From positions 1 to 64,000 of IMG/VR virus record IMGVR_UViG_3300030019_000003: a stretch of 64,000 nt of DNA, one strand, 5' to 3'. Under the pieces are notes generated by a model, which was given only the letters and a program-made list of their open reading frames with translations, was not told the DNA's origin and did not search any database. Shown here piece after piece: positions 8,137-57,729 of this stretch. The translations under genes and the position numbers were made by a program. Numbering within the stretch: the first letter of the stretch is position 1; each line of letters starts with the position of its first letter.

Positions 8137-8225
8137 TTTCTTCTCCTTATAAATACTATACTTATCATACAAAATAGTATTAATACCTAACGAAGAGGTT
8201 AAATGATTAAAAATAAGGATGAAAT

Positions 8226-9266: not shown

Positions 9267-9275
9267 AGGTAAAAA

Positions 9276-35478: not shown

Positions 35479-37536
35479 ATGAGCAGTTCATCTGTAACTA
35501 ATAACGTTGTATCTAACAGTGATGTAGTTAACGCAGTTCCTGTACGAGAGTTGATGGGGTTTAAACCTGAAGAGTTATTAAAGGGATTACGTAAGAATCT
35601 TGATGTACTCTTTGAGGACAATGTCGTTATAAAGATGCGGTGGGCTGAGGTTGTACTTAACCGGTATGTCTTCATACTTTTAGATTATGCTCCGAATATT
35701 CCTATTCTTAGCAAGTATTGTATTAAGAACTATTATAACAACGGAATTTATACTTCCAAGACTATTAATAAAGTCTTGGAAAAGATATTTGAAAGTATCG
35801 TAAAGAATATCTGTGTTCCGATGGGTAATAGAGATCTTATCCCAGTCTTAGCCAAGACAATTTATCAACTTCATAATCGTATCTATAATGAAGTAGTTTA
35901 TGAGTTATTGGAATACGCTGGATCCGTTGATATCGTTGACTTCTTGGAGATACAAAAAGATCCAAGACTTCTAAAAGCAATACAAAAAGTAGATGAAAAT
36001 AAAGATGCTCGTTCTATTAATGAAGCTTATGATGTACTTGAGACAGTTATTAAAGAAACACCTGATAACATTATCTCTAAAGGGTATATTGGAACAACGT
36101 TTAATCCTAATCAGGTTAAACAACTACTAGGACCACGTGGACATATTACAGAAATCAATAGTGATATTTTCAAATTCCCTGTAGCTTCTTCATTTGTTCT
36201 TGGTATGAACTCTATGACAGATATTGCTATGGAATCAAGAGCAGCCGCTAAAGCATTACACCTATCTTCTACAGCAGTACAACAATCTGAGTATATTGCT
36301 AGAGAGATGCAAATGGTCTCTATGTATATTCAAGGTCTATGGTATGGTGATTGTGGTACTAAGACATATACAGATTGGTACGTTCGTGGTGATGAACCCG
36401 GTGTTAAATCGGATATACCTTCTTTAACAGGTAAATGGTTCTTAAACGATGCAGGTGTTGAGGAATGTATCACATCAGATCATAAGTATTTAGAAGGTAA
36501 AACTATCAAACTACGTATGATTCATAACTGTAGACTTCCTGATAAACGTTGTGTATGTTCTAGATGTTATGGTGAGCTATCATGGTCTATACCTAAGCAT
36601 GCTAATATTGGTCACTATAGTTCAACGTACATAACTCAAAAGTTAACACAGGCTATCTTATCTACGAAGCATCATACTTCTTCTGCTGTATCTTCTACGA
36701 TTGTTCTAGATGACTTGAGTAAACAATATATGGTAGTTAAACAAGGTGCTAGTTATGCATTTAGACCTAATCTATTAGGTAAAGTAAAAACGAAGTACTA
36801 TATGATTGTTACTCAAGCTGAAGCTCCAGGTATTAAAGATTTTGATTATCGTACCAATGTTAATAAACTTAGACCTAATCGTGTAAGTCGTATTCGTAAG
36901 ATCATCTTGATGGAAGAAAGTGAACAAGCTACTAAGTTCATCGATCTTCCGATTAAAGATGGCAATCGTATAGGAAGTTTCACATATAAGTTCTTAGAAC
37001 ATATTCGTGATGTTGGTTATAGTCTTGATAAGAAAAATAGGTTTGTTATTAGTCTTGAAGGTTGGGGGAATAAAACGTTTATTGATTTACCTAACCTAGA
37101 GTTTAATCACCTTGAAATGATCAAGATGATCCGTACAGAGTTAAAGTATATGAAAACAGAAAAAGCAGGATTTAAAGCAGAAACAATTGAATCATTTGTT
37201 GTTAAGCTTAATGATATGCTAAACAGTAAACTAGATGTTCCATTGATTCATACTGAAATTGTTGTTGCAGCGCATACTGTAGCTAATCCAGAAAATAGAA
37301 ATTACGATATGGCTAGAAATAACGCTGAATCAGGGTTAGCTAACTATCGTAACATATTAAGTGGTAGGTCGCTAGGTGCTGGCTATGCTTGGGAACGTGT
37401 TATGGGTATGATGCTTAAAACACCTTTAGGGTATGGTAACCAAAGAACAACAAGTCATCCTATGGATGTATTCATTAGACCTAATGAAGCTATATCTGAA
37501 TATGAACGACGTGGTAAATACTTAGCAAGAAGTTAA
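35479..37536 (+). CDS. Non-virion multisubunit RNA polymerase beta-prime subunit, C-terminal part (phiKZ gp74-like)
   Basis: NQVKQLLGPRG, bridge-helix region SRAAAKAL…SEYIAREMQ, GDCGT, Zn site CRLP…VCSRCYGE, trigger-loop region TQKLTQAILSTKH. Confidence 0.85.
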   Translation: MSSSSVTNNVVSNSDVVNAVPVRELMGFKPEELLKGLRKNLDVLFEDNVVIKMRWAEVVLNRYVFILLDYAPNIPILSKYCIKNYYNNGIYTSKTINKVLEKIFESIVKNICVPMGNRDLIPVLAKTIYQLHNRIYNEVVYELLEYAGSVDIVDFLEIQKDPRLLKAIQKVDENKDARSINEAYDVLETVIKETPDNIISKGYIGTTFNPNQVKQLLGPRGHITEINSDIFKFPVASSFVLGMNSMTDIAMESRAAAKALHLSSTAVQQSEYIAREMQMVSMYIQGLWYGDCGTKTYTDWYVRGDEPGVKSDIPSLTGKWFLNDAGVEECITSDHKYLEGKTIKLRMIHNCRLPDKRCVCSRCYGELSWSIPKHANIGHYSSTYITQKLTQAILSTKHHTSSAVSSTIVLDDLSKQYMVVKQGASYAFRPNLLGKVKTKYYMIVTQAEAPGIKDFDYRTNVNKLRPNRVSRIRKIILMEESEQATKFIDLPIKDGNRIGSFTYKFLEHIRDVGYSLDKKNRFVISLEGWGNKTFIDLPNLEFNHLEMIKMIRTELKYMKTEKAGFKAETIESFVVKLNDMLNSKLDVPLIHTEIVVAAHTVANPENRNYDMARNNAESGLANYRNILSGRSLGAGYAWERVMGMMLKTPLGYGNQRTTSHPMDVFIRPNEAISEYERRGKYLARS

Positions 37537-44820: not shown

Positions 44821-47073
44821 ATGGGTAATATAATGACACTACTTGATAATGTCACAGGTAAAACAATTAATGTGAATGTAGGTAGCGACAGCATACAGGA
44901 AGACGCCAATATTATATTTGGTGGCAATGGCGGTACTGTATTAACCTATGAAGAAATGAATGACCCTAGCAATATACCTGATGGCTTTAAAGCAGGTTTA
45001 AAAACATATTTTGATACTTTGTACTCTGCAGGTAGTGGTGGTTCTGGTACTATTACAGGCTCTTCAACAGCTCCTATTTTAACAGGTCCTAATGTTGGTA
45101 ATGAGACGGCAACAATTACTATAAGTGTTGATAACTACGATCCTTCAAGTATTTATACTTTTGATGTATCTGGTGGTAGTTTTTCAAGAGTAGCAGGTGT
45201 TGTTACGTGGATACTTCCACAAGTAACAGATTCAGCCGCACACAAGCTTACTGTAACTGTAACCAATCCTGGTAAAACAGTAACATCAGTATATCACTCT
45301 GTAAATGTTTTTAATATTAACGCGACTGTCGACTCTATGGTTGTTTACCAGGATACGACTATGGCACAGTTTAGTAATTTATATAATGCTAGTATTGTTA
45401 ATAGTAAGCTATTAGCAACAGACGATACTGTGTTATCAGTAGGAAATAATAAGGTTATCGCCGTAGCTGTTATGGAGAAAGGTGACAATATTTATGTTGA
45501 TGGTAATGTGTATAATGTGGACACGTTAACAACAATGTCACCTATCACTAATGGTGCTTATTTATTATCTACAACTAACAGTGTTCCGTTTTTGACTGCT
45601 GCGAATAGTAGTCCTACTATTGGAACTGCTATAGGTAGTGGCAATTGGTCTACATACTACCAACCCTATACAGTATTTGGAACACCACAATATGGTGTAT
45701 GGGCAGATACTAAGTTAACAAATGCGTGGGTAGGATTTACATTTCTAACTGCTAAAGTTATTAACAAGTACCTTATTAAAGGTTTTAAATTGGTAGGTGG
45801 CAGTGGTGTTACAGCTACATGTGCTCCTAAAAGTTGGATGTTACAGGGTAGTAATGATGGTACAAATTGGGCTACACTAGATACTGTTTTAAACCAGCCA
45901 ACATGGAATGATGATGAGGTTAGAATATTCGTATGCGAAAATGGTGTAGCGTACACAAGTTACAGAATTTTCATTACTGCTAATCAAGGTAACACAACTG
46001 TAAGCGGTCTTAGTAATCTTTCATTCGTAGAGGCAGTAGGCTCAGTAACGTTAGTAACCGGAACAACACCAACTCTACCACAGTTTATTACATCTGCTAA
46101 ATTATTAACAAAATATGGTGAGAGTGCCGTTATAACACAAGATACCTATGAAACAGATTTTACAGGGTTAACAGCTATAGAAGCTATTTATGAACAATAC
46201 AATATTGTGTCAGATTCAACTACAGTAACTTCCGCACCTACGGGAAATGTTATCTTAGGGGATACTGTTATTTTTGGAAATACTACAGATGGTGAAAGAT
46301 CATTAACTGTTAATAGCTCTAACTATAGTAATAATATCTTGGATATTTCATCTTTAGGTTTTACAGTTGTACCGACGTATGGGTATAGAAAAGATTCAGT
46401 TTTAAAAATAAATATAGGTGATAATGTATTATTATCAGATACTAGAACAGATGTTATTTTATCAACTCCTATGTTTGTTTCGGATGGTAGCAAGAATACA
46501 TCTGTTGTAAACGCTGTCCCAGTTTTATCAAGTGCAAGTGCTGCTGTATTATTAGGAGCCGTTTATGGTGGGTATACAGGTTGGTATGCCTTTGACTCAG
46601 GTCTTGTTGATACGGTACAGACATGTTTATTAAATGTTACCGCTACAGTACCATCGTGGTTAGGTTACGACTTTACTAGAAAGATCATTATTAATAAGTA
46701 TGGTATTAATTCTAGAGTGAACTGGAGTGGTCCAGGAACATGGAAGTTACAAGCATCTAATGATAATGTTACGTTTATAGACTTAGACACGCAGACAGGT
46801 ATCACTTGGACAACAACTGCTACTACAAAATGGTTTACATTTAACAATGCCGTTGCTTACAGATATTATAGAATATATGTAACAGCCCCTGTTAACTATA
46901 TCGATATTACAGAGTTAATATTTGTAGAGAACAATTCTACTAAGATGCGGATTAAAACTGATTATAGCGATATCATCACTGGTAATTCAGCTAGAACGTT
47001 AAAGTTCAAAGTTAAGTTAAATAAGATTGGTGATGCACTAGCAAAATTAACAGCAACTATACAAAAACTATAA
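44821..47073 (+). CDS. Tail fibre/receptor-binding protein with two discoidin (F5/8 type C) domains
   Basis: APKSWMLQGSNDGTNWATLD…YTSYRIFIT and PGTWKLQASNDNVTFIDLD…YRYYRIYVT; followed by a tail-assembly-type gene. Confidence 0.75.
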   Translation: MGNIMTLLDNVTGKTINVNVGSDSIQEDANIIFGGNGGTVLTYEEMNDPSNIPDGFKAGLKTYFDTLYSAGSGGSGTITGSSTAPILTGPNVGNETATITISVDNYDPSSIYTFDVSGGSFSRVAGVVTWILPQVTDSAAHKLTVTVTNPGKTVTSVYHSVNVFNINATVDSMVVYQDTTMAQFSNLYNASIVNSKLLATDDTVLSVGNNKVIAVAVMEKGDNIYVDGNVYNVDTLTTMSPITNGAYLLSTTNSVPFLTAANSSPTIGTAIGSGNWSTYYQPYTVFGTPQYGVWADTKLTNAWVGFTFLTAKVINKYLIKGFKLVGGSGVTATCAPKSWMLQGSNDGTNWATLDTVLNQPTWNDDEVRIFVCENGVAYTSYRIFITANQGNTTVSGLSNLSFVEAVGSVTLVTGTTPTLPQFITSAKLLTKYGESAVITQDTYETDFTGLTAIEAIYEQYNIVSDSTTVTSAPTGNVILGDTVIFGNTTDGERSLTVNSSNYSNNILDISSLGFTVVPTYGYRKDSVLKINIGDNVLLSDTRTDVILSTPMFVSDGSKNTSVVNAVPVLSSASAAVLLGAVYGGYTGWYAFDSGLVDTVQTCLLNVTATVPSWLGYDFTRKIIINKYGINSRVNWSGPGTWKLQASNDNVTFIDLDTQTGITWTTTATTKWFTFNNAVAYRYYRIYVTAPVNYIDITELIFVENNSTKMRIKTDYSDIITGNSARTLKFKVKLNKIGDALAKLTATIQKL

Positions 47074-47513: not shown

Positions 47514-49886
47514 ATGAATAATGTTATGACACTAACAGACCCTATTACCAATAACAATATAAACATTAGTGTAGAGGGTGATAGTATCGTGAAGAGTGTA
47601 GATATTGTTTTTGGAAAAGATGGTGGTAAGGTTATAACTTTTGAAGAGTTATCCGATCCAGCAAAATTGCCAGCTGAATTCTTAGCAGCGGTCAGTGGTA
47701 CTGATGCCGATGGTGTGATTTCTATATTTACAAACGCTACAAGTGATAATGTAATAGCTGATACAGATAAGATACCATTTGTAAATGTTGGTGATGGTAC
47801 TAATGAGAGTATTAACAATATACCATTTGGAAGTTTTAAAACAGAATTAAAAACATATTTTGATACGCAGTATGCCGGTAAAAATGCTGATGGTACCACA
47901 GTAGGTTCATCTGCTGCCCCAGTGATATCAGGACCAGATATTGGTAATGAAACAGCTACTATTGTGCTAACCGTTGACAATTACAATACGAGTAGCATTT
48001 ATACTTTTGATGTAAGTGGTGGTAGTTTCTCTAGATCAGGTGGCGTAGTAACCTGGTTATTACCACAAGTAACAGATTCAACAGCGCATAAGTTAACGGT
48101 GACAGTTACTGATGCTGGTAAGACTCCTACGACTGTTTTTCATTCTGTTAACGTTTTTAATATTAACACTACAGTAGACTCTATGGTACTTTATGAAGGA
48201 AGCACATTAAGCGAGTTTAGCAATTTATACAACATGAGTGTTGTAGCTAGTCGACTACTAGCTACAGGTGATACTATTTTAACTGTTGCTAATAATAAAA
48301 TAGCTACAATTCCAACAATGGAAAGTGGCGATAAGATTTTAGTAGACGGCATAACATATGAAATATCATCTTTTGCCCTTGGTGAAGATGGCGCTAGTAA
48401 TACCTCTTTATTAAGCGCAGTGCCGGTATTAACAAGTAACACTAGTAGCACACTAGGTACAGCTATTTGTAGCAATGCTTACTCTGGTCATGCGGCATTT
48501 AATAGTTTTAATATGGGTAATATAGCTAATAGCTGGATAACGAATAGTTTTGCGGGAACCGACTATTTGGGATTTAATTTTATAGCACCCATAGTTATTA
48601 ACAAGTACACTATGATTGGAAATGGGTATGATAAGGTTTCATCTCCTAAAAGTTGGATATTACAAGCATCTAATGATGGCACAACCTGGGTAAATTTAGA
48701 TACTAGACTTAATCAACCAGTGTGGGTTAATTCAGAGTCAAGAACATACACATTTCTAAACTCAGTACCTTATAAAATTTATAGGGTATACATTACAGCT
48801 AATCAAGGTGGCGTATACGCTCAAATAGGTTACCTATCGTTAATACAGCAAGGTACCGTGATTTCAGCGACATTACCAGTATTACCACAATTTATTACAG
48901 CTGCAAAGTTATTAACTAAATTCGCAGAAACTAATACTATTACACAAGATACATATGAAACAGATTTTACAGGTGTATCAGGGTTGACTGCTGTGTATGA
49001 GCAATACAATTTAATAACAGCTGGTGCAACAGTAACCTCTATTCCAACAGTATCTGCCAATGTGGGCGATATAATTATACTTGGAAATAGCGCAGATGGT
49101 GTTAAAACACTAGAACTTACAACTAGTAATTATACTAATGGCGTTATTGATATTTCATCTTTAGGATTCGCAACTGTACCAACATACGGTTATCGCAAAG
49201 ATGCAAAATTACAAGTTGGGATAGGTAGTAATTCATTTGTAGCAGATAATAGAGTAGATACGATATTATCTTCACCTCTTTTTATAGGTGATGGTGCACA
49301 AAACACATCAACAATTAACGCAATACCATTATTAACAACGGATACCCCAGCTTTAACCAATAGTGCCCTGTACAATGCTACCTACCCAGCATGGCATATT
49401 GCAGATGGTGTACTAGTAGACACTGCGTCAACATGTTTAATACAAGTAGCTGCTGGTGCCCCAGCGTGGTTAAAATATGATTTTAGTAGGCCTATCGTTA
49501 TTAATAAATATGGTATTAATTCTAGAGTAAACTGGTCTGCGCCTACAGCATGGACACTACAAGCATCTGATGATAATATCAATTTTGTTATATTAGACAC
49601 TAGAGTAAATATTGTTTATACCGCAACCGCTGAGACTAAATGGTTTACGTTTAATAACGCAAAAGGTTATAGGTATTATAAACTTGTTATTACGGCGCCT
49701 ATAGCTTCTTATGTGGATATTACAGAATTAATTCTTGTAGAGAATAACTCTTCTAAGATGCAAATTAAGACTGTCTATGACGATATCATTACAGGTAACT
49801 CTGCTAGAACACTTAAGTTTCGTGTTAAACTTAATCAAATCGGAGATGCTGTAGAGAAGATTTCTGGAACAATAGAAAAGTTATAA
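47514..49886 (+). CDS. Tail fibre/receptor-binding protein with two discoidin domains, paralog of 44821-47073
   Basis: SPKSWILQASNDGTTWVNLD and APTAWTLQASDDNINFVILD; long shared segments with the 750-aa gene. Confidence 0.75.
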   Translation: MNNVMTLTDPITNNNINISVEGDSIVKSVDIVFGKDGGKVITFEELSDPAKLPAEFLAAVSGTDADGVISIFTNATSDNVIADTDKIPFVNVGDGTNESINNIPFGSFKTELKTYFDTQYAGKNADGTTVGSSAAPVISGPDIGNETATIVLTVDNYNTSSIYTFDVSGGSFSRSGGVVTWLLPQVTDSTAHKLTVTVTDAGKTPTTVFHSVNVFNINTTVDSMVLYEGSTLSEFSNLYNMSVVASRLLATGDTILTVANNKIATIPTMESGDKILVDGITYEISSFALGEDGASNTSLLSAVPVLTSNTSSTLGTAICSNAYSGHAAFNSFNMGNIANSWITNSFAGTDYLGFNFIAPIVINKYTMIGNGYDKVSSPKSWILQASNDGTTWVNLDTRLNQPVWVNSESRTYTFLNSVPYKIYRVYITANQGGVYAQIGYLSLIQQGTVISATLPVLPQFITAAKLLTKFAETNTITQDTYETDFTGVSGLTAVYEQYNLITAGATVTSIPTVSANVGDIIILGNSADGVKTLELTTSNYTNGVIDISSLGFATVPTYGYRKDAKLQVGIGSNSFVADNRVDTILSSPLFIGDGAQNTSTINAIPLLTTDTPALTNSALYNATYPAWHIADGVLVDTASTCLIQVAAGAPAWLKYDFSRPIVINKYGINSRVNWSAPTAWTLQASDDNINFVILDTRVNIVYTATAETKWFTFNNAKGYRYYKLVITAPIASYVDITELILVENNSSKMQIKTVYDDIITGNSARTLKFRVKLNQIGDAVEKISGTIEKL

Positions 49887-50999: not shown

Positions 51000-51902
51000 A
51001 TGAAAGTTCTTATTTATAAGAATAATAAACTAACTGTTGTTAACGATAATAAATCTGTATTTGAGATTACAGCAGAAAAGCCAGCGTACCTAACAGCAGA
51101 TGAAATTCATTACGATGTTTTTGTAAAAACGATTACTACTAATGGTGTGACGACAGATATGACAGAAAATGAAATGGCTGTCGCTGAGGCATTTATTACC
51201 AGTTATTCTTTTACAGTGGCTGCTGCTGATATAACTCCTGATAATAAAGTTTATTGTATCAATACTTATGGTGACTATATAGGATTTAAAGTACTCACTG
51301 CTAATGAAGTAGCTGTTGCAAGTATGCCACCACAAGATGGTAAACATTATTTTTGGGATGGTACAGATTGGAAACTAGCTATGGCTGTAAATGCATCAGG
51401 CACGTTAGCAGGTTTAGGTATAGTGGCTACTGGTACACAATTTTATATCGACGCCTCATTAGTGACTACAACTGGTTTAACAGCAGCCCAGACTTATGAT
51501 ATTGCAACTAAAACTATCGTCACAAACATGAGTGTAGCTAGAACAACTATTCTAAAATACATCCAACGCAGCATGTTTAACATTTATAATGACAATGTTG
51601 GTATATTGGGGATAAATGAAGTTAGCTCATTCACAACACAGGCTGCTGAAGCCAATGCCTGGAAAGCTGACAATACGTCTTTAACTCCATTTATAGACGT
51701 ATTGCTAATTAGACGTAGACAGAATGAAACTAAAGAAGAGTTGGTAAATAAGATTATTGCCAAGTCATCAGTTTACACACCGGTATCTGCTGGCATTACA
51801 GGTGATTTTCAATATTATAAAAAACGTATTGAAGATGCTACAGATTTACCTAGCTTAATAGTAATTCGTGATGAGTGGGATAAACTAGTGGAGGTAGCCT
51901 AA
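51000..51902 (+). CDS. Tail fibre assembly/chaperone-like protein
   Basis: PPQDGKHYFWDGTDWK and C-terminal EVSSFTTQAAEANAWKADNTSLTPFIDVLL…ETKEELVNKII; paralog of 56741-57688. Confidence 0.6.
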   Translation: MKVLIYKNNKLTVVNDNKSVFEITAEKPAYLTADEIHYDVFVKTITTNGVTTDMTENEMAVAEAFITSYSFTVAAADITPDNKVYCINTYGDYIGFKVLTANEVAVASMPPQDGKHYFWDGTDWKLAMAVNASGTLAGLGIVATGTQFYIDASLVTTTGLTAAQTYDIATKTIVTNMSVARTTILKYIQRSMFNIYNDNVGILGINEVSSFTTQAAEANAWKADNTSLTPFIDVLLIRRRQNETKEELVNKIIAKSSVYTPVSAGITGDFQYYKKRIEDATDLPSLIVIRDEWDKLVEVA

Positions 51903-52612
51903 TGTCTGGAATACTTGCTGACCTTGCCGGAAGTTCCGGCGGTATACCTACCTATACATTTACAAGTAACTATGACTGGGGTGATTTCAATCTTGCTACA
52001 GTATTTGATGCGCTAACGGTTGCTAATAGTAATAAATTCATAATCAACATACCTGCTGGTATTACAGTGTCAGGTGGTGGTGGCTCAGGTGTTCTTTCTG
52101 CTTTTAACTTTTCATATACTGAAGGTAAAACTATCACCATTAATAATGCTGGGGTTATTGCAGCCGGTAAGGGACAAGTTATTAACCAATATTTACGCGG
52201 AACACTTGGTAGCTATAACAACTATCAGTATGGTCCTTTTAATTGCTGGGGCGCTATGGCTAACCCTAATGGCGGATATGGTGGGTGTAGCGGTAATGGA
52301 TACTATATGATAGCAGATTCTGGACGGGCTTATGCTATTTGTGGAAATAAAGAGGTATATGCTGCGATGTCGTGGTCTTGGACTGATAATTCATCCATGC
52401 CGTCAATGCCTGCTAGTGGGTGCACTGGAATCTGGGGGTGGACATTGGTACAGGTTACAGGTGGCGAGGTGGTGAGTGACATTATCACAGGAAATAATAC
52501 TGTTAATGTTGGCGGCGCCAGGTATAATGGGTCTACCAGTGCTAATAATTATTATGAGTCTAATGAAAGTGCCAGATGTGATTGCGACTGTTGCGATTAT
52601 ACCAGCGGGTAA
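51902..52612 (+). CDS. Gly-rich gp38-like tail-tip adhesin with a Cys-rich C-terminus
   Basis: FNLATVF…IINIPAGITVSGGGG…TITINNAGVIAAGKG resembles T2/S16 gp38-type adhesins; ends RCDCDCCDYTSG. Confidence 0.55.
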   Translation: MSGILADLAGSSGGIPTYTFTSNYDWGDFNLATVFDALTVANSNKFIINIPAGITVSGGGGSGVLSAFNFSYTEGKTITINNAGVIAAGKGQVINQYLRGTLGSYNNYQYGPFNCWGAMANPNGGYGGCSGNGYYMIADSGRAYAICGNKEVYAAMSWSWTDNSSMPSMPASGCTGIWGWTLVQVTGGEVVSDIITGNNTVNVGGARYNGSTSANNYYESNESARCDCDCCDYTSG

Positions 52613-52638
52613 TTCTAAATAAATAATTTAAACATAAT

Positions 52639-52666
52639 AGCGTCAGGGAGTATACTCCCTGACGCT
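52639..52666 (+). terminator. Perfect 28-bp palindrome
   Basis: AGCGTCAGGGAGTATACTCCCTGACGCT. Confidence 0.65.
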
Positions 52667-52692
52667 GTAATAAGAAATTCAAAGGATGATTT

Positions 52693-53715
52693 ATGGAGGA
52701 GATTAAGACACCTACTGGTGGGACGGTTGTTATGTTAGTAGATACTTTTTGTGCAACAGGATGTAGCTATTGTCATTTAGCTACTAGAGAGAAAAACCCT
52801 GCTAGTTATGGTTATGAAAAATTGAATAATCTAATGAAATATATTAGACCAAAGTCTATTACGGTATATGCAGGGGATACATTTTATAATCACGATAACA
52901 TTAAGAAAGCCTATGAGTATGCGTTGTCTATACCTTCAGTACTTAAGGTCCAGTCTGTATCAGAAATTCAAAAGCTCTACAGGGATTTTGATATTAGAAC
53001 AGAAATTTTCGATATGTGCCTTTCTAGAGGTAAAAACTGTGGTGTGGAATTTAGTTTAGATCTGGCTGGTACTAAATCTGGAAACTATGTAGATTTATTA
53101 AATGCTTTTTATGCTGAAACGGGTACACCGATTTCTTTCACATGTGTTCTAACAATGGAACAAGTTTTGACACCAGATATTGATATTATTATTAAAGAGT
53201 ATATGAACACTTATAAAGGATTAAATTTTCTAGGCACTGTAGGGATTGCTCTAGATTATAATTCTGCTTTAACAAGGAGTTCTGATTATAACACCATTTT
53301 AAATCAGGTTGAGAAAGTATTTGCAGCTTTTTATGGGTCAGTCGATATTATGTCTTTTAAAGGTTTAAGACCGCAATTACTAAGTCAACGAGGATGTTTA
53401 TCTAGGCAAGCTCAAACATTAGTTAAATACGATGGTATGCTGTCAACATGTGGTAAAGTAAGACCTGATTTAGATATAACACCAATTTCTGCTTTAGATA
53501 TGTCAAGAGAGAATTATGAGACGTTTTATGACTCTAAATTAGTATTCCAAAAAGAAGTTAACTTTGATATCTGTGAAACGTGTGAAGCAAAGAATATTTG
53601 TGTTAGGTGTCCTAAGTTTATATTGCAGTCTAAGAATTTTGATGGTACCGCGGATACGTGTATGTTTTACAAATCAATGGTCGCTGTTGCAAAGAGACGC
53701 GGCATACTACTTTAA
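52693..53715 (+). CDS. Radical SAM enzyme with a SPASM-type auxiliary Fe-S domain
   Basis: CATGCSYC (CxxxCxxC); C-terminal RGC…DGMLSTC…CETCEAKNICVRC…TC. Confidence 0.85.
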   Translation: MEEIKTPTGGTVVMLVDTFCATGCSYCHLATREKNPASYGYEKLNNLMKYIRPKSITVYAGDTFYNHDNIKKAYEYALSIPSVLKVQSVSEIQKLYRDFDIRTEIFDMCLSRGKNCGVEFSLDLAGTKSGNYVDLLNAFYAETGTPISFTCVLTMEQVLTPDIDIIIKEYMNTYKGLNFLGTVGIALDYNSALTRSSDYNTILNQVEKVFAAFYGSVDIMSFKGLRPQLLSQRGCLSRQAQTLVKYDGMLSTCGKVRPDLDITPISALDMSRENYETFYDSKLVFQKEVNFDICETCEAKNICVRCPKFILQSKNFDGTADTCMFYKSMVAVAKRRGILL

Positions 53716-53738
53716 ACTGGTTAAGGGAGGGAGTTTAA

Positions 53739-54707
53739 ATGTACGATAAATGGGAAAATACCTTAAGGTATATGTTTAATGCCGCACAAGATAATAGTGC
53801 TCAATTTAAGTTAGCTAGGTTATTACATTTGAAATTAGCAGAGCATACCCTAGATAGAACAGGGACAACAGAGACTGAAAAAGACTATGTTATATGCAGC
53901 CCTATTTCAGAAGTATCTCTTAATCCAATTCCACTATCGGATATAATGGTAACTAGAGGATTAGAAATAATGAAAGACGAAACTAGAGATATTTATCTCA
54001 TGTGGAGTGGTGGCATGGATTCAACAGGAGCCTTTTATGCCTTATTGAATACTGGAAAACATTTTAATGTTATTTTTAATTCAAAATCTGTTAATGAGTA
54101 TGCTGATTTAGGTAACAAATTAATTAATGGTTATTTTGAAAATGTTACTACTATGTACAATCCTAAGAAATTTGATCTTCCTGAGTTTATAGCGAGTCAT
54201 CCTAATGCTACTATAGTAACAGGTGAACTTGGTGATCAAACCTTTGGTAGTGACAGTATGTTTAAATATTATCCTGAAGAAAGAAAACTAAATGTTCTAA
54301 CCGCTGTTGAAAATGAACTTTTAGATAAAGATGTTTTTGAATACACGGCACCCAAGGTTATGCTAGCTCTTGGATTACAAGATTTTAGTAATACAACTCT
54401 GGCAGCTTATTTGTGGGCATTAAACTTTATTTTTAAATATCAAAATGTACAGTTACGTTTTGGATATCTTAACATAATGACAAATGATCCATCTGGCAAA
54501 AATAACGGGCTACATTTCTACGACACAAAAGAATTTAATAGCTATGCTATGCTTAATTATAAAAATAATGCCAATTTTGAGAAAGATACTGATTACAAGA
54601 TGCCGTTAAAAGAATATATCTTTAGTCAAAACAATGATGCCGTCTACCGCGATACCAAAATTAAATTAGGTTCACTACGCTATACTGACTATAGTATAAG
54701 GAAATAG
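53739..54707 (+). CDS. Asparagine-synthetase-like PP-loop ATP pyrophosphatase (synthetase domain only)
   Basis: YLMWSGGMDST PP-loop and VTGELGDQTFG (AsnB-type SGEGADExFG); no N-terminal Ntn glutaminase domain. Confidence 0.7.
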   Translation: MYDKWENTLRYMFNAAQDNSAQFKLARLLHLKLAEHTLDRTGTTETEKDYVICSPISEVSLNPIPLSDIMVTRGLEIMKDETRDIYLMWSGGMDSTGAFYALLNTGKHFNVIFNSKSVNEYADLGNKLINGYFENVTTMYNPKKFDLPEFIASHPNATIVTGELGDQTFGSDSMFKYYPEERKLNVLTAVENELLDKDVFEYTAPKVMLALGLQDFSNTTLAAYLWALNFIFKYQNVQLRFGYLNIMTNDPSGKNNGLHFYDTKEFNSYAMLNYKNNANFEKDTDYKMPLKEYIFSQNNDAVYRDTKIKLGSLRYTDYSIRK

Positions 54708-54709
54708 AC

Positions 54710-55444
54710 ATGATTCAGAATATACCATCTGAATTTATTTTATCGGATCCTAGAAAAGATAGAGGTAATGCTAAATTAACCACACATAGTTTAATGGCTC
54801 GTTGGGAGGGGTTCACAAATAATATAAATCTTAAAGATAAGGTAATTCTTGATTTAGGTTGCGCTAACGCTGCTTTCGGTTATTTATCACTTGAGGCTGG
54901 CTGCAAGAATTATACTGGTGTTGAGGTTCAAAATGAATACTATAATACTGGTACGCACCTATTAAAAAAATACTACCCTGCGGGAAAATGGTCTATTAAA
55001 AAAACGGATATTACATCTTTTTTTAATACGCAACAGGGTGAATATGATATAGTTTTTGCCTGTGGTGTGATATACGGGGTATTTGATATAATAAGCTTAC
55101 TTAAAAACTTATTTAAAGTTACAAAAGAAACCCTAATAATAGAAAGCGTGAACCCACTTTCTGAAATAGATAGCCCGGCTATTGAGGTAACCTATGCAAC
55201 TATGGTAGATCACACGGATATTTTATACCCACTCCATGGTATTGGTTTTTTACCTAATTTTAAAGCACTAGCTTTAATTTCAGCTGTTTTTGGATTTGAA
55301 GCAGAGCTTATTGATTTATATCTACCAGAATATAATCAGATTCGCCGTAAGAAAAACAAAAGATATTTTTGTAAGTTTACTAATAAAAAACACCAAACAG
55401 CATGCGCACTAGAGACAATGATAATAAATAGGGGGAAAGAGTGA
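54710..55444 (+). CDS. Class I SAM-dependent methyltransferase
   Basis: KVILDLGCANA motif I, YTGVEV, YDIVFACGVIY. Confidence 0.8.
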   Translation: MIQNIPSEFILSDPRKDRGNAKLTTHSLMARWEGFTNNINLKDKVILDLGCANAAFGYLSLEAGCKNYTGVEVQNEYYNTGTHLLKKYYPAGKWSIKKTDITSFFNTQQGEYDIVFACGVIYGVFDIISLLKNLFKVTKETLIIESVNPLSEIDSPAIEVTYATMVDHTDILYPLHGIGFLPNFKALALISAVFGFEAELIDLYLPEYNQIRRKKNKRYFCKFTNKKHQTACALETMIINRGKE

Positions 55445-56721
55445 ATATAGAGAAATTCTTAGTTGCAAACAGAACATTAACATTCTTGTTAACATCCATT
55501 TCTATTGCATCTGCGTGGATATGGGCACCTGCATTATTTGTGTCTGCAACGGTAGCCTATAAATGGGGACTAGAAGGGTTATTGTGGTTTCTTATACCTA
55601 ACGTTTTAACATTAGTATTATTTGCTTTTGTTGGAAAAGTTCTAAGAGATAAGGATGAACGTGGGTATACCCTTTCGCAGTATATAAAAGAAAGAACCTC
55701 AAACAGATTACAGTATTTTTATATATTTGAATTACTGCTAATATCGGTATGCTGTATCGCAGTTCAACTGATTGCGGGTGGTAAACTACTATCTGGATTA
55801 TTACCTGTACTAAGTTATTTTGAATGGGTTGCAGTTCTTGGTGGCGTACCTGCTTTATATACTTTCTTTTATGGGATTAAGTCATCTGTTCTTATGGATA
55901 TTATACATTACACACTAATGTTCATATGCCTGGTAGGGATTACATTATTTTTAATATTTAGTAAACATTTAAGCAGTATACCTTTTACAGGTGTTGTTAA
56001 TACATCCAGTCTTAGTATCGCTTTAAGTTTTGGAATACCTACTGCTATAGGGCTATTAGCCGGAGCATTTGGTTCACAGGACTTTTATCAGCGTGCGTAT
56101 GCCGTTGTTAAAGAAGATGTTTTTAAATCCTATCTTGCTGGAGCAGGATTATTTATAGTCATACCTATCATGGTATCATTATTAGGCTTTACAGCTATTA
56201 ACGAAGGTTTTACTATTAAAGATATTGGTATGGTTAACTTTGAAACACTAGGATTTTTAAATATACCTTTAGCATCAACAGCACTAGCTATTGCCATTCT
56301 CTGTGGATTAACGTCGACTATTGATTCTTCTCAAACTTCGGTATCGGCTATATTCGGAAATGATATTTCAAAAATATTTTACGGTGACAGCAAGGTTTGG
56401 TTAGCAAGACTGGGTATTATCATAGTTACGGTGTTAGCTATCATTATTGCTAATACGGGTATTACTATTTTACAACTGTTCTTAACTTATGGTGCTATAA
56501 GATCATCGGTATTCTTAGTCTCATTGATGGCGGTATTAACAGATAGGATACTAAATAGCAACGCTGTTGTATACTCATTATTAGCTGTTGTTTTAATATT
56601 AGTACCTATTAATATTTATGCTATCCTAAATAAGATAGAAATACTACAGACAACGATGGCTATTTTGATTGTTGGCATACCAGGTATTGTTACCTATATA
56701 ACAAGTAAACAAAAAATATAA
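55441..56721 (+). CDS. Sodium:solute symporter (SSS) family transporter
   Basis: About 12 hydrophobic helices; SIASAWIWAPAL, GYTLSQYIKERT, GIKSSVLMDIIH, QDFYQRAYA, GLTSTIDS motifs. Confidence 0.85.
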   Translation: MNIEKFLVANRTLTFLLTSISIASAWIWAPALFVSATVAYKWGLEGLLWFLIPNVLTLVLFAFVGKVLRDKDERGYTLSQYIKERTSNRLQYFYIFELLLISVCCIAVQLIAGGKLLSGLLPVLSYFEWVAVLGGVPALYTFFYGIKSSVLMDIIHYTLMFICLVGITLFLIFSKHLSSIPFTGVVNTSSLSIALSFGIPTAIGLLAGAFGSQDFYQRAYAVVKEDVFKSYLAGAGLFIVIPIMVSLLGFTAINEGFTIKDIGMVNFETLGFLNIPLASTALAIAILCGLTSTIDSSQTSVSAIFGNDISKIFYGDSKVWLARLGIIIVTVLAIIIANTGITILQLFLTYGAIRSSVFLVSLMAVLTDRILNSNAVVYSLLAVVLILVPINIYAILNKIEILQTTMAILIVGIPGIVTYITSKQKI

Positions 56722-56740: not shown

Positions 56741-57688
56741 ATGGCTATAAAAGTACTTATATACGAAAATGGCTTACTTACAGTAACACGTGACTACAGA
56801 AGTGCTGTTAGGATACCAGCAGAAAAACCTAATTTTATTATTGGTGACAGATTTTATTACAGTTCTGAAAAGAAAAGTATCGTTGAAGACTGGAATAATA
56901 CAGCTGAGCTAACAGAGTGTGAAATAAACGCTGCAGAAGAGTTTATCAATAGTTATGTTTTCGCTCCTATTGTTACTATCCCTACTACGATGCCGATGAG
57001 CGACATTAAGGAGCTTGTATTGGTAGATAGCAAGGGTGCCTATAAAGGTACCAGTTTTGCTAATCCTGGGCTTATAGTTGTTCCATTGATGCCTACAGAT
57101 CCTAATAAGTATTATTGGGATTTTGAAACAAATAACTGGATAGAAGGATATACTATAGTAACTGAAACAGGGATGCTAGTAGGAAGCACTATTCTCACAG
57201 GGGAGACCTATTCTTATATACCCGCTTCGTTAGTAGATAAAAATCTGTGTTCTATGTGCCAAGTCTATGATGCCACTCTTAAGAGAGTAGTCATTGACAT
57301 CGCTAAGTATAAGATGAAAGCTTATAAAACAGTATCCGAGGCTATGAGTAAAGCCATTGATACACGTTTAGATAAACCTGGTAAATATGAGGTAGTATCA
57401 TTCTTTGTACAAGTGGCTGAAGCTAAATCTTATTTAACCTTTAAAGATTTTCCAACACCTTATTTAAGTACGTTATTAGCTAGAAGAAAACGTATAATAG
57501 AGGGTAGACCTGAAACCATGGATGATCTTGTTGATAAGATCATTAAGAAGTCAATTCCGTTTGAAATATTTCATGCTGGTGTACTTGGTGAATACCACAG
57601 GCTAAAAGATCTTATTGATAATGCCGAGACGGTAGAAGAGATAGATGCCATAACAGAGACAATGGATTTTTTAGAAAACAAAGAATAA
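56741..57688 (+). CDS. Tail fibre assembly/chaperone-like protein, paralog of 51000-51902
   Basis: KVLIYENGLLTV N-terminus, EVVSFFVQVAEAKSY…TPYLSTLLARR…ETMDDLVDKII C-terminus. Confidence 0.6.
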   Translation: MAIKVLIYENGLLTVTRDYRSAVRIPAEKPNFIIGDRFYYSSEKKSIVEDWNNTAELTECEINAAEEFINSYVFAPIVTIPTTMPMSDIKELVLVDSKGAYKGTSFANPGLIVVPLMPTDPNKYYWDFETNNWIEGYTIVTETGMLVGSTILTGETYSYIPASLVDKNLCSMCQVYDATLKRVVIDIAKYKMKAYKTVSEAMSKAIDTRLDKPGKYEVVSFFVQVAEAKSYLTFKDFPTPYLSTLLARRKRIIEGRPETMDDLVDKIIKKSIPFEIFHAGVLGEYHRLKDLIDNAETVEEIDAITETMDFLENKE

Positions 57689-57693
57689 TTAAA

Positions 57694-57729
57694 CTTAACA
57701 AGAAACACGTAATCGTGTTTCTTGTTAAG
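57694..57729 (+). terminator. 16-bp stem hairpin
   Basis: CTTAACAAGAAACACG-TAAT-CGTGTTTCTTGTTAAG. Confidence 0.65.

What the first reader, a model, noticed from the sequence alone, without database searches (positions are those of the whole stretch)
51902..56721. Phage tail-locus RiPP-like tailoring cassette: radical SAM/SPASM + AsnB-like ligase + methyltransferase + Na+/solute symporter beside a Cys-tailed adhesin
Seen in sequence: in the middle of the tail-fibre genes sit four tightly packed genes, a CxxxCxxC radical SAM with a SPASM-type Cys array, a glutaminase-less asparagine-synthetase-like PP-loop enzyme, a class I methyltransferase and a full SSS transporter. Immediately upstream is a gp38-like adhesin ending RCDCDCCDYTSG, with 8 Cys in 236 aa while the neighbouring fibres are Cys-poor. 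Established: SPASM radical SAMs typically crosslink or modify Cys-containing peptides and proteins (sactipeptide/ranthipeptide maturases, anaerobic sulfatase maturases); AsnB-like domains form amide bonds (lasso cyclases); SSS proteins import small solutes. Inference: the phage may chemically mature its receptor-binding tip (thioether crosslinks, amidation, methylation) using an imported substrate, which would be a post-translational modification system for a virion protein. Caveat: a 28-bp palindrome separates the adhesin from the enzyme genes, so co-transcription is not assured.
Basis: partly seen in the sequence, partly recalled or inferred. Interest (0 to 1): 0.88.

Follow-up and report, generated by a model that had tools for sequence, protein, structure and literature searches.

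The report
Radical-SAM tailoring of phage adhesin tail
An uncultured jumbo phage encodes, among its tail-fibre genes, a glycine-rich tip protein ending in a short cysteine-rich tail; in every related phage found, this protein lies next to a rare radical-SAM enzyme, which suggests that the enzyme chemically matures a phage host-recognition protein, something not previously described.

Summary
Comparative genomics splits the "cassette" into two modules.

**Module 1: Cys-tailed protein plus radical SAM enzyme.**
- It consists of the 236-aa Gly-rich protein (tail RCDCDCCDYTSG) and a very rare, divergent radical SAM/SPASM enzyme. Only 14 relatives at E<=1e-10 were found among 1.84 billion representative proteins.
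- In 8 distinct loci with a readable neighbour, 7 carry a Cys-dense (CxCxC-type) C-terminus.
- Eleven homologous Gly-rich proteins from loci without this enzyme have no C-terminal Cys (Fisher p = 1.6e-4).
- In two loci the Cys motif is fused directly to a self-cleaving Hint domain, so the motif is meant to be the mature C-terminus.

**Module 2: AsnB-like PP-loop enzyme, methyltransferase and SSS transporter.**
- The AsnB-like family is widespread in uncultured phages (at least 79 contigs, 39 lineages).
- It usually pairs with a cupin (21 lineages), an SSS transporter (9) or a DctP solute-binding protein (4).
- A Gly-rich gp38-like gene lies just upstream in 12 lineages, and one member is fused to a tail-assembly-chaperone domain.

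**Verdict:** enzyme-substrate coupling of the radical SAM enzyme and the Cys tail is well supported. The chemistry (thioether cross-links?), virion location and the role of the imported solute remain inferences. I found no published description.

The parts
51000..51902 (+). 300-aa phrog_2618-type protein. It is a paralogue of 56741-57688, and its family is a conserved neighbour of the radical SAM/Cys-tail pair. A possible role as fibre assembly factor or fibre part is an inference.
   Evidence: phrog_2618 E 2.5e-15. It shares 31% identity with the 315-aa paralogue, E 6e-38. Homologues lie next to the radical SAM enzyme in L008, L009, L014, L015, L018 and L021.
51902..52612 (+). 236-aa Gly-rich protein, the putative substrate. 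Its N-terminal domain belongs to a superfamily that includes gp38-like tail-fibre adhesin candidates.
   Evidence: Translation. 43% identity over 101 aa to the L009 225-aa protein, E 3e-16. hhalign of A3 against c38 gives 96.3% probability, E 1.7e-9; c38 against the GP38-like c12 gives 99.4%. No Pfam or PHROG hit of its own. The AF2 model is poor, pLDDT 44.
52574..52609 (+). C-terminal Cys-dense tail RCDCDCCDYTSG (residues 225-236), the proposed modification site.
   Evidence: It is the only CxCxC-bearing segment among 245 in the window. Equivalent tails occur in L009, L012, L015/16, L008, L014 and L021.
52639..52666 (.). Perfect 28-nt palindrome (12-bp stem, 4-nt loop) between the substrate gene and the enzyme genes. 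It may act as an attenuator or mRNA-stabilising hairpin that sets the substrate:enzyme ratio (inference).
   Evidence: RNA fold -26.8 kcal/mol, z -6.6. No T-run on the + strand. It is not conserved in the related loci, where the gaps are 6-29 bases.
52693..53715 (+). 340-aa divergent radical SAM enzyme with a full SPASM domain and no N-terminal RRE domain.
   Evidence: Ten invariant Cys in 12 members. The family is rare: 25 hits at E<=1e-3 and 14 at E<=1e-10 among 1.84e9 representatives.
53739..54707 (+). 322-aa AsnB-like PP-loop ATP pyrophosphatase (synthetase domain only). It belongs to a family widespread in uncultured phages.
   Evidence: SGGMDS and TGELGDQTFGS motifs, invariant in A1. Fold matches. 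At least 79 IMG/VR loci. Homologue in L021, E 5e-23.
54710..55444 (+). 244-aa class I SAM-dependent methyltransferase with weak CmoB-like similarity.
   Evidence: PF13847 28.1 bits (cut-off 27), and PF08003 24.5 bits, also above its 23.8 cut-off. TIGR00452 36.5 bits, far below its cut-off of 275. Homologues lie beside the AsnB-like gene in L003 and L033.
55441..56721 (+). 426-aa sodium:solute symporter family transporter with a GTG start that overlaps the methyltransferase stop.
   Evidence: PF00474 61.7 bits. phrog_20720 E 3e-70. About 11 hydrophobic spans. It is adjacent to the AsnB-like gene in 9 of 39 lineages.
56741..57688 (+). 315-aa phrog_2618-type paralogue that closes the cassette.

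Best explanation
The region is a composite maturation cassette for a tail-fibre tip protein. It is made of two modules of separate evolutionary origin.

**Module 1**
- The 236-aa Gly-rich protein is the substrate of the adjacent radical SAM/SPASM enzyme.
- The enzyme acts on the very C-terminal Cys-dense tail (CxCxCC...). The most likely chemistry is radical H-abstraction, with Cys sulfur joined to a carbon of a neighbouring Asp, Asn, Ser, Thr or Tyr residue.
- This would form thioether staples of the sactionine or ranthionine kind, within one chain or between chains of the fibre tip.
- The enzyme has no RRE leader-binding domain. It therefore works like the protein-directed SPASM maturases (anaerobic sulfatase maturase, QhpD) rather than like leader-dependent RiPP maturases.
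- The strong hairpin after the substrate gene would let the structural protein be made in excess over the enzymes.

**Module 2**
- The AsnB-like enzyme adenylates a carboxylate and forms an amide.
- Its recurrent partners are solute-uptake proteins (SSS transporter or TRAP DctP, both typically carboxylate importers), a cupin, and here a methyltransferase.
- Its recurrent neighbours are Gly-rich gp38-like genes and tail-assembly chaperones.
- It therefore probably decorates or ligates the adhesin, or makes a small molecule used at the fibre tip, from an imported solute.

**What is shown and what is inferred**
- Shown: gene content, motifs, fold class, and the co-occurrence statistics.
- Inferred: the substrate relationship, the chemistry, the virion location, and any role of the imported solute.
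For: **Coupling of the radical SAM enzyme and the Cys tail**
- The radical SAM family is very rare.
- In all 9 distinct loci read, it lies within 0-2 genes of a Gly-rich or Cys-tailed protein gene: the window, L009, L012, L015/16, L008, L014, L018-20, L021/22 and L108.
- In 7 of the 8 loci with a readable C-terminus, 4-5 of the last 13 residues are Cys. This compares with 0 of 11 distinct homologous Gly-rich proteins in loci lacking the enzyme (Fisher p 1.6e-4, or 4.7e-3 by lineage).
- Background CxCxC outside this protein family is 1 of 982 ORF-sized segments across all loci read.

**The motif is meant to be the free C-terminus**
- In L008 and L014 the motif is followed directly by a Hint autoprocessing domain. 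That domain starts at the last Cys and has TxxH 58 residues later.

**RiPP-like elaboration in relatives**
- L009 has a second, anSME-like SPASM enzyme plus ThiF.
- L008 has a second SPASM enzyme.
- L012 and L017 have tandem paralogues.
- L021 has five radical SAM genes beside a 16-Cys heptad-repeat tail.

**Enzyme integrity**
- All 3+7 cluster Cys are invariant.

**Tail-locus context**
-.

**Module 2**
- AsnB-like fold.
- Partners across 39 lineages: cupin 21, SSS transporter 9, DctP 4, Gly-rich ORF upstream 12.
- Fusion to Pfam Phage_tail_APC, E 1e-12, in L063.
- Co-occurrence with the radical SAM/Cys-tail pair in the distant locus L021.
Against: **General limits**
- No experiment and no structure of the substrate are available (AF2 pLDDT 44).
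- All relatives come from uncultured assemblies.
- Virion location is inferred only from synteny and a transitive profile link to GP38-like proteins. The Pfam GP38 hit on those proteins is itself just below its cut-off.

**Against module 1**
- L018 keeps the enzyme but has only one Cys in its tail.
- Alternating CxC motifs are also classic metal-binding motifs.
- The radical SAM enzyme matches no characterised thioether maturase at family cut-off.
- The profile finds nothing in the PDB by sequence.

**Against module 2 acting on the adhesin**
- Two thirds of the lineages show no Gly-rich gene upstream.
- One large lineage sits between replication genes (DnaB, MazG).
- Bacterial homologues sit beside an Asp/Glu racemase, MatE and DctM.
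- An SSS transporter homologue in another phage sits beside PAPS-reductase-like and ParB-like genes.
Confidence: 0.55

Rival explanations
1. The Cys tail is a metal- or iron-sulfur-binding motif. It would be analogous to the His-x-His iron sites of the T4 long-fibre tip, or to metallothionein CxC motifs. It is not covalently cross-linked. The radical SAM/SPASM protein either helps load the metal or cluster, or performs a different radical reaction: epimerisation, C-methylation, formylglycine formation, or a three-residue cyclophane at the Tyr that follows the Cys run.
For: - Alternating CxCxC, and the heptad CTCNCNY repeated four times in L021, resemble metal-binding repeats.
- A Tyr lies in or beside the tail in the window and in L021.
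- Weak N-terminal similarity to cyclophane-forming AmcB, and SPASM-region similarity to the anaerobic sulfatase maturase.
Against: - The exclusive co-occurrence with a radical SAM enzyme argues for covalent chemistry on the tail.
- The sulfatase-maturase substrate motif (C/S-x-P/A-x-R, from established knowledge) is absent from the tails.
- No SPASM enzyme is known to act as a metal chaperone (own knowledge).
Confidence: 0.2
2. Only the radical SAM enzyme is tied to the Gly-rich protein. The AsnB-like enzyme, methyltransferase and SSS transporter form an auxiliary metabolic module that imports a carboxylate solute and converts it (amidation, methylation) for the infected cell. This module would have landed in the recombination-prone tail-fibre region by chance.
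For: - The AsnB-like family occurs with the radical SAM enzyme in only 2 of 39 lineages.
- It pairs with transport proteins in 13 lineages.
- One lineage lies among replication genes.
- Bacterial homologues lie beside an Asp/Glu racemase, DctM and MatE.
Against: - Gly-rich adhesin-like genes lie immediately upstream in 12 lineages, representing at least four unrelated Gly-rich families (A3, c38/c12, c19, Gly_rich_2).
- One member is fused to a tail-assembly-chaperone domain.
- DUF4376 or tail-fibre PHROG proteins sit between the adhesin and the enzyme in several loci.
Confidence: 0.35
3. The 236-aa Gly-rich protein is not a virion part. It would be a phage-encoded, RiPP-like secreted or lysis-released product (a bacteriocin-like protein or host-surface effector) matured by the cassette.
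For: - The protein itself has no structural-protein HMM hit.
- Gly-rich, C-terminally modified bacteriocins exist (own knowledge).
- ThiF and multiple radical SAM genes in relatives resemble natural-product clusters.
Against: - The gene always lies directly after long fibre genes and beside phrog_2618, DUF4376 or chaperone-type genes, on the late-gene strand.
- There is a profile link to GP38-like host-specificity proteins.
- No signal peptide or export genes were seen in the sequence; no signal-peptide predictor was run.
Confidence: 0.1
4. The enzymes modify DNA or nucleotides. This would be a QueC/QueE-like deazaguanine or other base-hypermodification pathway, with nothing to do with proteins.
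For: - A PHROG 'QueC-like' hit covers the PP-loop only, residues 77-115.
- QueE is a radical SAM enzyme (own knowledge).
- An SSS transporter homologue elsewhere lies beside PAPS-reductase-like and ParB-like genes.
Against: - No QueC, QueE, QueD, FolE or transglycosylase family hit at any threshold.
- The radical SAM enzyme carries a SPASM domain, which QueE lacks.
- The PP-loop enzyme's fold is AsnB-like.
- Synteny is with fibre genes and Cys-tailed proteins.
Confidence: 0.03

Closest known systems
Thioether-forming radical SAM/SPASM maturases of Cys-rich peptides (SCIFF and ranthipeptide maturases such as PapB and CteB; sactipeptide maturases)
   Same: - CX3CX2C plus a seven-Cys SPASM domain.
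- The gene lies next to a precursor whose C-terminal part is dense in Cys interleaved with Asp, Asn, Ser or Thr. Freyrasin links Cys to Asp beta-carbons (own knowledge).
- Weak HMM similarity to PapB.
   Different: - No RRE leader-binding domain.
- The substrate is a folded protein of about 220-390 aa in a tail-fibre locus, not a short leader-core peptide.
- Family cut-offs are not met: at most 19.8 bits against 340.
- The system is phage-encoded.
Protein-directed SPASM maturases: QhpD (thioether links in the QhpC subunit) and the anaerobic sulfatase maturase (anSME)
   Same: - They act on proteins without an RRE.
- The cluster motif lies within about 30 residues of the N-terminus, and the overall size (about 340-370 aa) is similar to anSME.
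- QhpD joins Cys to Asp or Glu carbons (own knowledge).
- There are weak SPASM-region hits to anSME and QhpD.
   Different: - Scores are far below the cut-offs.
- The sulfatase motif is absent.
- There is no quinohemoprotein context.
Asparagine synthetase B-like amide-forming enzymes lacking glutaminase activity (lasso peptide cyclases, beta-lactam synthetase, carbapenam synthetase)
   Same: - PP-loop SGGxDS plus a downstream acidic G-E-x-G-D-Q-x-F-G motif.
- Best fold matches.
- No glutaminase domain.
   Different: - Pfam Asn_synthase does not hit.
- TM-score to PDB members is only about 0.4.
- Partners are a cupin, an SSS transporter or DctP, with tail-fibre genes nearby, not a leader peptidase or a beta-lactam pathway.
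T2/T6/S16-type gp38 tail-fibre adhesins (Gly-rich motifs forming a polyglycine-II sandwich)
   Same: - A small Gly-rich protein encoded just after the distal fibre genes.
- The related c12 family hits Pfam GP38 (E 4e-5) and a 'host specificity' PHROG.
- The profile chain A3-c38-c12 links them.
   Different: - The window protein itself does not hit GP38.
- Homology is confined to the N-terminal ~110 residues.
- gp38 has no Cys tail and no known enzymatic maturation (own knowledge).
C-terminal Hint/hedgehog-type autoprocessing domains
   Same: In L008 and L014 a Hint domain with Cys1 and TxxH follows the Cys motif and ends the protein, with no C-extein.
   Different: It is present only in relatives, not in the window. 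Its product (a free acid, a thioester transfer or a cycle) is unknown.

Membership tests
Radical SAM superfamily | CX3CX2C motif binding the SAM-cleaving [4Fe-4S] cluster | tested here: met
   C20, C24 and C27 are invariant in 12 family members.
Radical SAM superfamily | Pfam PF04055 score at or above the gathering threshold | tested here: not met
   21.2 bits against a cut-off of 29.5, E 3.5e-4. The family is highly divergent.
SPASM-domain radical SAM enzymes | C-terminal seven-Cys array (CX9-15GX4C ... CX2CX5CX3C ... C) for two auxiliary clusters | tested here: met
   C235-x12-G-x4-C253, C294-x2-C297-x5-C303-x2-C306 and C323 are all invariant. One spacing is x2 instead of x3. TIGR04085 scores 16.8 bits for the window protein, but 27.6 (cut-off 27) for P0014 and P0023.
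Leader-dependent RiPP maturases | RRE (PqqD-like) peptide-recognition domain | tested here: not met
   Only 19 residues precede the cluster motif, and there is no PqqD or RRE hit in Pfam or NCBIfam.
SCIFF/ranthipeptide maturases (TIGR03974, PapB NF047865) | Family HMM at or above the curated cut-off | tested here: not met
   The best PapB score in the family is 19.8 bits against 340. There is no SCIFF-maturase hit.
SCIFF/ranthipeptide maturases | Thioether links demonstrated in the product | not testable with these tools
   This needs mass spectrometry or NMR of the co-expressed substrate.
Anaerobic sulfatase maturase | Family HMM at cut-off, and the C/S-x-P/A-x-R motif in the substrate | tested here: not met
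   At most 17.6 bits against 349. The motif is absent from all tails.
Asparagine synthetase B-like synthetase domain | PP-loop SGGxDS ATP pyrophosphatase motif | tested here: met
   S90-G-G-M-D-S95 is invariant in 11 sequences.
Asparagine synthetase B-like synthetase domain | Pfam Asn_synthase (PF00733) hit | tested here: not met
   No Pfam family at E<=0.01.
Asparagine synthetase B-like synthetase domain | Fold similarity to AsnB-family structures | tested here: met
   BFVD proteins named 'Asparagine synthase' match at TMq 0.65-0.71, E 9e-13 to 1.7e-9. The top PDB hits are AsnB, beta-lactam synthetase and carbapenam synthetase, but weakly (E 3e-3, TMq about 0.4).
Asparagine synthetase B (glutamine-hydrolysing) | N-terminal Ntn glutaminase domain | tested here: not met
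   The protein is 322 aa with about 80 residues before the PP-loop and no GATase hit.
QueC (7-cyano-7-deazaguanine synthase) | Full-length family HMM match | tested here: not met
   Only a 39-residue PP-loop match to phrog_1550. No NCBIfam or Pfam QueC hit.
Class I SAM-dependent methyltransferase | Rossmann-fold methyltransferase HMM at cut-off, and a Gly-rich motif I | tested here: met
   PF13847 28.1 bits (cut-off 27). Motif VILDLGCANAAFG.
CmoB (carboxy-SAM-dependent tRNA modification) | Equivalog HMM at cut-off | tested here: not met
   TIGR00452 36.5 bits against 275. This is a resemblance only.
Sodium:solute symporter family | PF00474 at or above the gathering threshold, and a multi-span membrane topology | tested here: met
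   61.7 bits against 22.8, covering profile positions 1-399 of 406. About 11 hydrophobic spans. The substrate is not predictable.
gp38 tail-fibre adhesin (PF05268) | Family HMM match | tested here: inconclusive
   There is no hit for the window protein. The related c12 family scores 23.9 bits against 25. The profile chain is A3-c38 at 96% probability and c38-c12 at 99%.
Virion structural protein | Presence in purified particles | not testable with these tools
   The phage is uncultured. Only synteny with tail genes is available.

The most novel reading that the evidence does not exclude
Phages run RiPP-style enzymology on their own receptor-binding proteins, in two ways:
- A dedicated radical SAM/SPASM maturase staples, or otherwise radically rewrites, the Cys-dense C-terminal tip of a gp38-superfamily adhesin.
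- A widespread, so far unnamed AsnB-like 'adhesin ligase' family (at least 39 lineages of uncultured phages) uses a solute imported by a phage-encoded SSS or TRAP component to decorate fibre tips.

Host recognition would then depend partly on enzymatically installed, non-genetically-templated chemistry.
Probability: 0.3. Interest if true: 0.9.

Novelty: new variant of a known kind. Interest (0 to 1): 0.78.

Why it matters
**What would be new**
- Known covalent changes to phage virion proteins are mostly autocatalytic cross-links, proteolysis, glycosylation or methylation.
- An enzyme-installed radical cross-link at the receptor-binding tip would be a new layer of host-range and stability determination.
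- It would also extend RiPP-type maturases to large structural proteins of viruses.

**What it would offer in practice**
- A short C-terminal tag plus a compact, leader-independent maturase, which is potentially useful for stapling proteins.

**The second module**
- A widespread but unannotated AsnB-like enzyme family sits at tail-fibre loci of uncultured phages and is linked to phage-encoded solute uptake.
- This raises a directly testable question: do phages import metabolites to finish their adsorption apparatus?

Tried and rejected
**Searches of cultured-phage records**
- Megablast of the region against GenBank phages gave no match.
- tblastn against GenBank phages gave no match for the radical SAM enzyme, the AsnB-like enzyme (three different family members), the 236-aa protein or the L021 Cys-repeat protein. 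No cultured relative could therefore be named.

**Searches for relatives of the substrate and the radical SAM enzyme**
- The word-indexed protein search with the 236-aa protein found only itself. Homologues were found instead by reading the neighbours of the radical SAM homologues.
- IMG/VR and JGI metagenome scans with the radical SAM profile found only the window's own contig.
- The radical SAM profile finds nothing in the PDB by sequence.

**Structure prediction**
- The AF2 model of the 236-aa protein was too poor to search with (pLDDT 44).

**Profile comparisons that gave nothing**
- A3 against Pfam-type Gly_rich_2 proteins showed no relation.
- The phrog_2618 family against DUF4376 proteins was not significant.

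**Searches that could not be run**
So 'Cys tail without the enzyme' could not be searched for collection-wide.

**Readings rejected**
- The QueC/QueE DNA-modification reading was rejected.
- The hairpin as a conserved feature of the system was rejected, because it is absent from the related loci.

**Literature**
- Six full-text searches found no description of radical SAM enzymes coupled to phage tail proteins. The jumbo-phage survey PMC7824862 does not mention them.

Full report
**Source and setting.** The window is the first 64 kb of IMG/VR contig IMGVR_UViG_3300030019_000003 (252 kb), and window coordinates equal contig coordinates. It belongs to a distant phiKZ-like jumbo phage. A virion-type RNA polymerase beta-like gene at 35479-37536 hits phrog_3015 (E 1e-136). 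It is about 30% identical to those of Burkholderia phage FLC9 and Ralstonia phage RP12. The finding lies in a + strand late block. The 750-aa and 790-aa proteins upstream hit the tail PHROG 17517. The 328-aa protein hits several tail-fibre PHROGs. The 983-aa protein downstream carries RCC1-type repeats, as do fibre-cluster proteins in the related loci L008 and L014. The region has no near-identical DNA in GenBank phages.

**Checking the observation.** Every element is present as described.
- The five ORFs are tightly packed, with gaps of 80, 23, 2 and -4 bases.
- The 236-aa protein ends RCDCDCCDYTSG and has 8 Cys and 15.7% Gly. The six tail-region proteins upstream have 0-0.6% Cys.
- CxCxC occurs in only one of 245 ORF-sized segments of the window, namely this one.
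- The 340-aa protein has CX3CX2C at residues 20-27 and a complete seven-Cys SPASM array. All ten Cys are invariant across 12 family members. The generic HMM scores are below their cut-offs; two homologues reach the SPASM cut-off.
- The 322-aa protein has an invariant SGGxDS PP-loop and a TGE(L/I)GDQxFGS motif.
- Its AF2 model (pLDDT 84.7) matches viral proteins named 'Asparagine synthase' (TMq 0.65-0.71, E down to 9e-13). In the PDB it matches AsnB, beta-lactam synthetase and carbapenam synthetase best, though weakly. It has no glutaminase domain.
- The 244-aa protein is a class I methyltransferase with a weak CmoB-like flavour.
- The 426-aa protein is a sodium:solute symporter family member with about 11 hydrophobic spans.
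- The 28-nt palindrome at 52639-52666 is perfect and folds to -26.8 kcal/mol (z -6.6). It has no T-run on the coding strand.

**The radical SAM enzyme and the Cys tail are a conserved pair.** The radical SAM family is very rare. A profile search of 1.84 billion representative proteins gave 25 hits at E<=1e-3 and 14 at E<=1e-10. I read every context I could reach.

| Locus | Arrangement | Tail |
|---|---|---|
| L009 | Mtd_N fibre gene, 225-aa Gly-rich protein, radical SAM homologue, phrog_2618-type protein, second (anSME-like) SPASM enzyme, ThiF | ...GCGNCCNCSNCSG |
| L012 | upstream ORF, two tandem radical SAM paralogues | ...TCACNCDCSGCSG |
| L015/L016 | phrog_2618-type protein, 218-aa Gly-rich protein, radical SAM | ...GCNCDCNCTGN |
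| L008, L014 | fibre genes, 384/387-aa Gly-rich protein with Hint fusion, 255-aa protein, radical SAM, phrog_2618-type protein | ...SCNCSCC / ...VCNCDCSCC |
| L021/L022 | four other radical SAM genes, 143-aa protein, phrog_2618-type protein, methyltransferase-like protein, radical SAM homologue, AsnB-like homologue | heptad CTCNCNY repeated four times (16 Cys) |
| L018-20 | 221-aa Gly-rich protein, phrog_2618-type protein, radical SAM | one Cys only (the exception) |
| L108 | fibre gene, radical SAM, then a Gly-rich gene cut by the contig end | unreadable |

- The L009 protein is 43% identical to the window protein over 101 residues (E 3e-16).
- In L008 and L014 the Cys motif is followed immediately by a Hint domain. 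Its first residue is the last Cys, and TxxH lies 58 residues later.
- The AsnB-like homologue in L021 matches the window enzyme at E 5e-23.

The control comes from homologous Gly-rich proteins that lack the enzyme. In the loci fetched through the AsnB-like enzyme, two Gly-rich families share the N-terminal domain of the window protein's family. hhalign of A3 against c38 gives 96.3% probability (E 1.7e-9), and c38 against c12 gives 99.4%. None of their 11 distinct sequences has a single Cys in the last 13 residues, and none of those loci encodes the radical SAM enzyme. The counts are 7 of 8 against 0 of 11 (Fisher p = 1.6e-4), or 4.7e-3 when collapsed conservatively to lineages. I regard functional coupling of the enzyme and the tail as well supported. 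The Hint fusions add that the motif is meant to sit at the mature C-terminus.

**What the enzyme probably does.**
- It has the two auxiliary-cluster sites typical of SPASM enzymes that cross-link or oxidise peptide and protein substrates. It lacks an RRE domain.
- In architecture it therefore resembles protein-directed maturases such as the anaerobic sulfatase maturase and QhpD. The only weak family similarities are to those, to PapB and to AmcB.
- From established knowledge, Cys interleaved with Asp, Asn, Ser or Thr is what ranthipeptide, QhpC and sactipeptide substrates look like.
- The leading reading is therefore thioether stapling of the tip, within a chain or between chains of a fibre. 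This chemistry is an inference.
- Metal binding by CxC repeats, a Tyr-centred cyclophane, or another radical reaction are not excluded.
- The hairpin after the substrate gene fits a high-substrate, low-enzyme expression ratio. It is not conserved in the relatives, so I give it little weight.

**The AsnB-like enzyme, methyltransferase and SSS transporter are a separate module.**
- The AsnB-like family has 10 close relatives in the large protein collection, at least 79 IMG/VR loci and 6 bacterial MAG loci. It has no tblastn match in GenBank phage records.
- I surveyed 81 loci, which collapse to 39 lineages at 60% identity. The partners within three ORFs were a cupin in 21 lineages, an SSS transporter in 9, and a TRAP-type DctP solute-binding protein in 4.
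- A Gly-rich ORF lies upstream in 12 lineages, and the radical SAM enzyme in only 2: the window and L021.

Links to fibres are recurrent but not universal.
- The enzyme follows GP38-like proteins in one group (Pfam GP38 E 4e-5, phrog_2056 'host specificity').
- It follows c38-type Gly-rich proteins plus a small protein in another group.
- It follows Gly_rich_2 proteins in L003 and L013.
- It follows a Gly-rich protein plus a DUF4376 or tail-fibre-PHROG protein in a fourth group.
- In L063 it is fused to a Phage_tail_APC chaperone domain (E 1e-12).

Against a fibre role:
- A large T4-like lineage places DctP and two AsnB-like genes after DnaB and MazG.
- Bacterial homologues sit beside an Asp/Glu racemase, MatE or DctM.
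- An SSS transporter homologue in a human-gut phage sits beside PAPS-reductase-like and ParB-like genes.

Both SSS transporters and TRAP binding proteins typically handle carboxylates, and AsnB-like enzymes adenylate carboxylates (established knowledge). A coherent but unproven model is that an imported carboxylate is activated and amide-linked, either to the adhesin or to a small acceptor.

**Comparison with known systems and novelty.**
- Each enzyme belongs to a known superfamily, but none meets the cut-off of a characterised family (see the membership table).
- The system works like a RiPP or protein maturation cluster. Its substrate, however, is a gp38-superfamily tail protein of a phage.
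- Six full-text searches and a targeted look in the main jumbo-phage comparative survey found no description of such a pairing.
- I classify it as a new variant of a known kind.

**Confidence**

| Claim | Confidence |
|---|---|
| Radical SAM enzyme and Cys tail are functionally coupled | about 0.8 |
| The Gly-rich protein is a fibre-tip component | about 0.6 |
| The chemistry is thioether formation | about 0.4 |
| The AsnB-like, methyltransferase and SSS transporter module acts on the same protein | about 0.35-0.4 |
| The composite best explanation as stated | 0.55 |

**Limits.**
- All relatives come from short uncultured assemblies.
- A collection-wide search for Cys tails without the enzyme could not be run.

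Noticed in passing
window 35479-37536 and the whole window: The contig is a distant phiKZ-like jumbo phage. Its RNA polymerase beta-like gene is about 30% identical to those of Burkholderia phage FLC9 and Ralstonia phage RP12. There is no tRNA gene in the 64 kb.
   Followed up: partly
window 44821-47073 / 47514-49886 and 51000-51902 / 56741-57688: Two pairs of paralogous tail-region genes. The second pair (phrog_2618, 31% identity) brackets the cassette, as if the cassette had been inserted into, or had arisen with, a tandem duplication.
   Followed up: partly
window 57694-57729: A second perfect hairpin (16-bp stem, 4-nt loop) lies just after the 315-aa gene. It was scored as terminator-like on both strands.
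   Followed up: no
L008 8105-9259; L014 3677-4840: The Gly-rich protein is fused to a C-terminal Hint autoprocessing domain. That domain begins exactly at the last Cys of the CxCxCC motif and has no C-extein. The cleaved product would end in the Cys motif, possibly as a thioester.
   Followed up: partly
L021 117-10689 (also L022): This phage locus holds five radical SAM genes, a 143-aa protein whose tail is the heptad CTCNCNY repeated four times, a methyltransferase-like gene, an AsnB-like gene and a DctP gene. The Cys repeat hits phrog_26958 (unknown function), so cultured phages may carry similar repeats.
   Followed up: partly
L009 6469-8242: A second, anSME-like SPASM radical SAM enzyme and a ThiF-type adenylating enzyme follow the core pair. 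Three of the Cys-tailed proteins end in Ser-Gly, which may matter for C-terminal activation.
   Followed up: no
L063 7395-8996: An AsnB-like enzyme is fused to a Phage_tail_APC (tail assembly chaperone) domain and is followed by an SSS transporter.
   Followed up: partly
L024-L101 (IMG/VR loci): The AsnB-like family is common in uncultured phages. It usually pairs with a ~205-aa cupin, yet it has no tblastn match in GenBank phage records and no PHROG of its own. In some loci a P4H-like 2OG oxygenase and a DUF5675 protein also lie nearby.
   Followed up: partly
L001 (MT836198) 7912-11820: In this human-gut phage contig, the homologous SSS transporter (31% identity) lies beside two PAPS_reduct-domain genes and a ParB-like gene. 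The transporter recurs next to adenine-nucleotide-hydrolase-type enzymes in different contexts.
   Followed up: partly
L004-L007, L102-L107: Bacterial homologues of the AsnB-like enzyme fall into two groups. Some lie beside an Asp/Glu racemase (with a fused FIST domain in one locus), MatE or DctM. Others (L102, L104) lie beside the same cupin as in phages and may be prophages.
   Followed up: no
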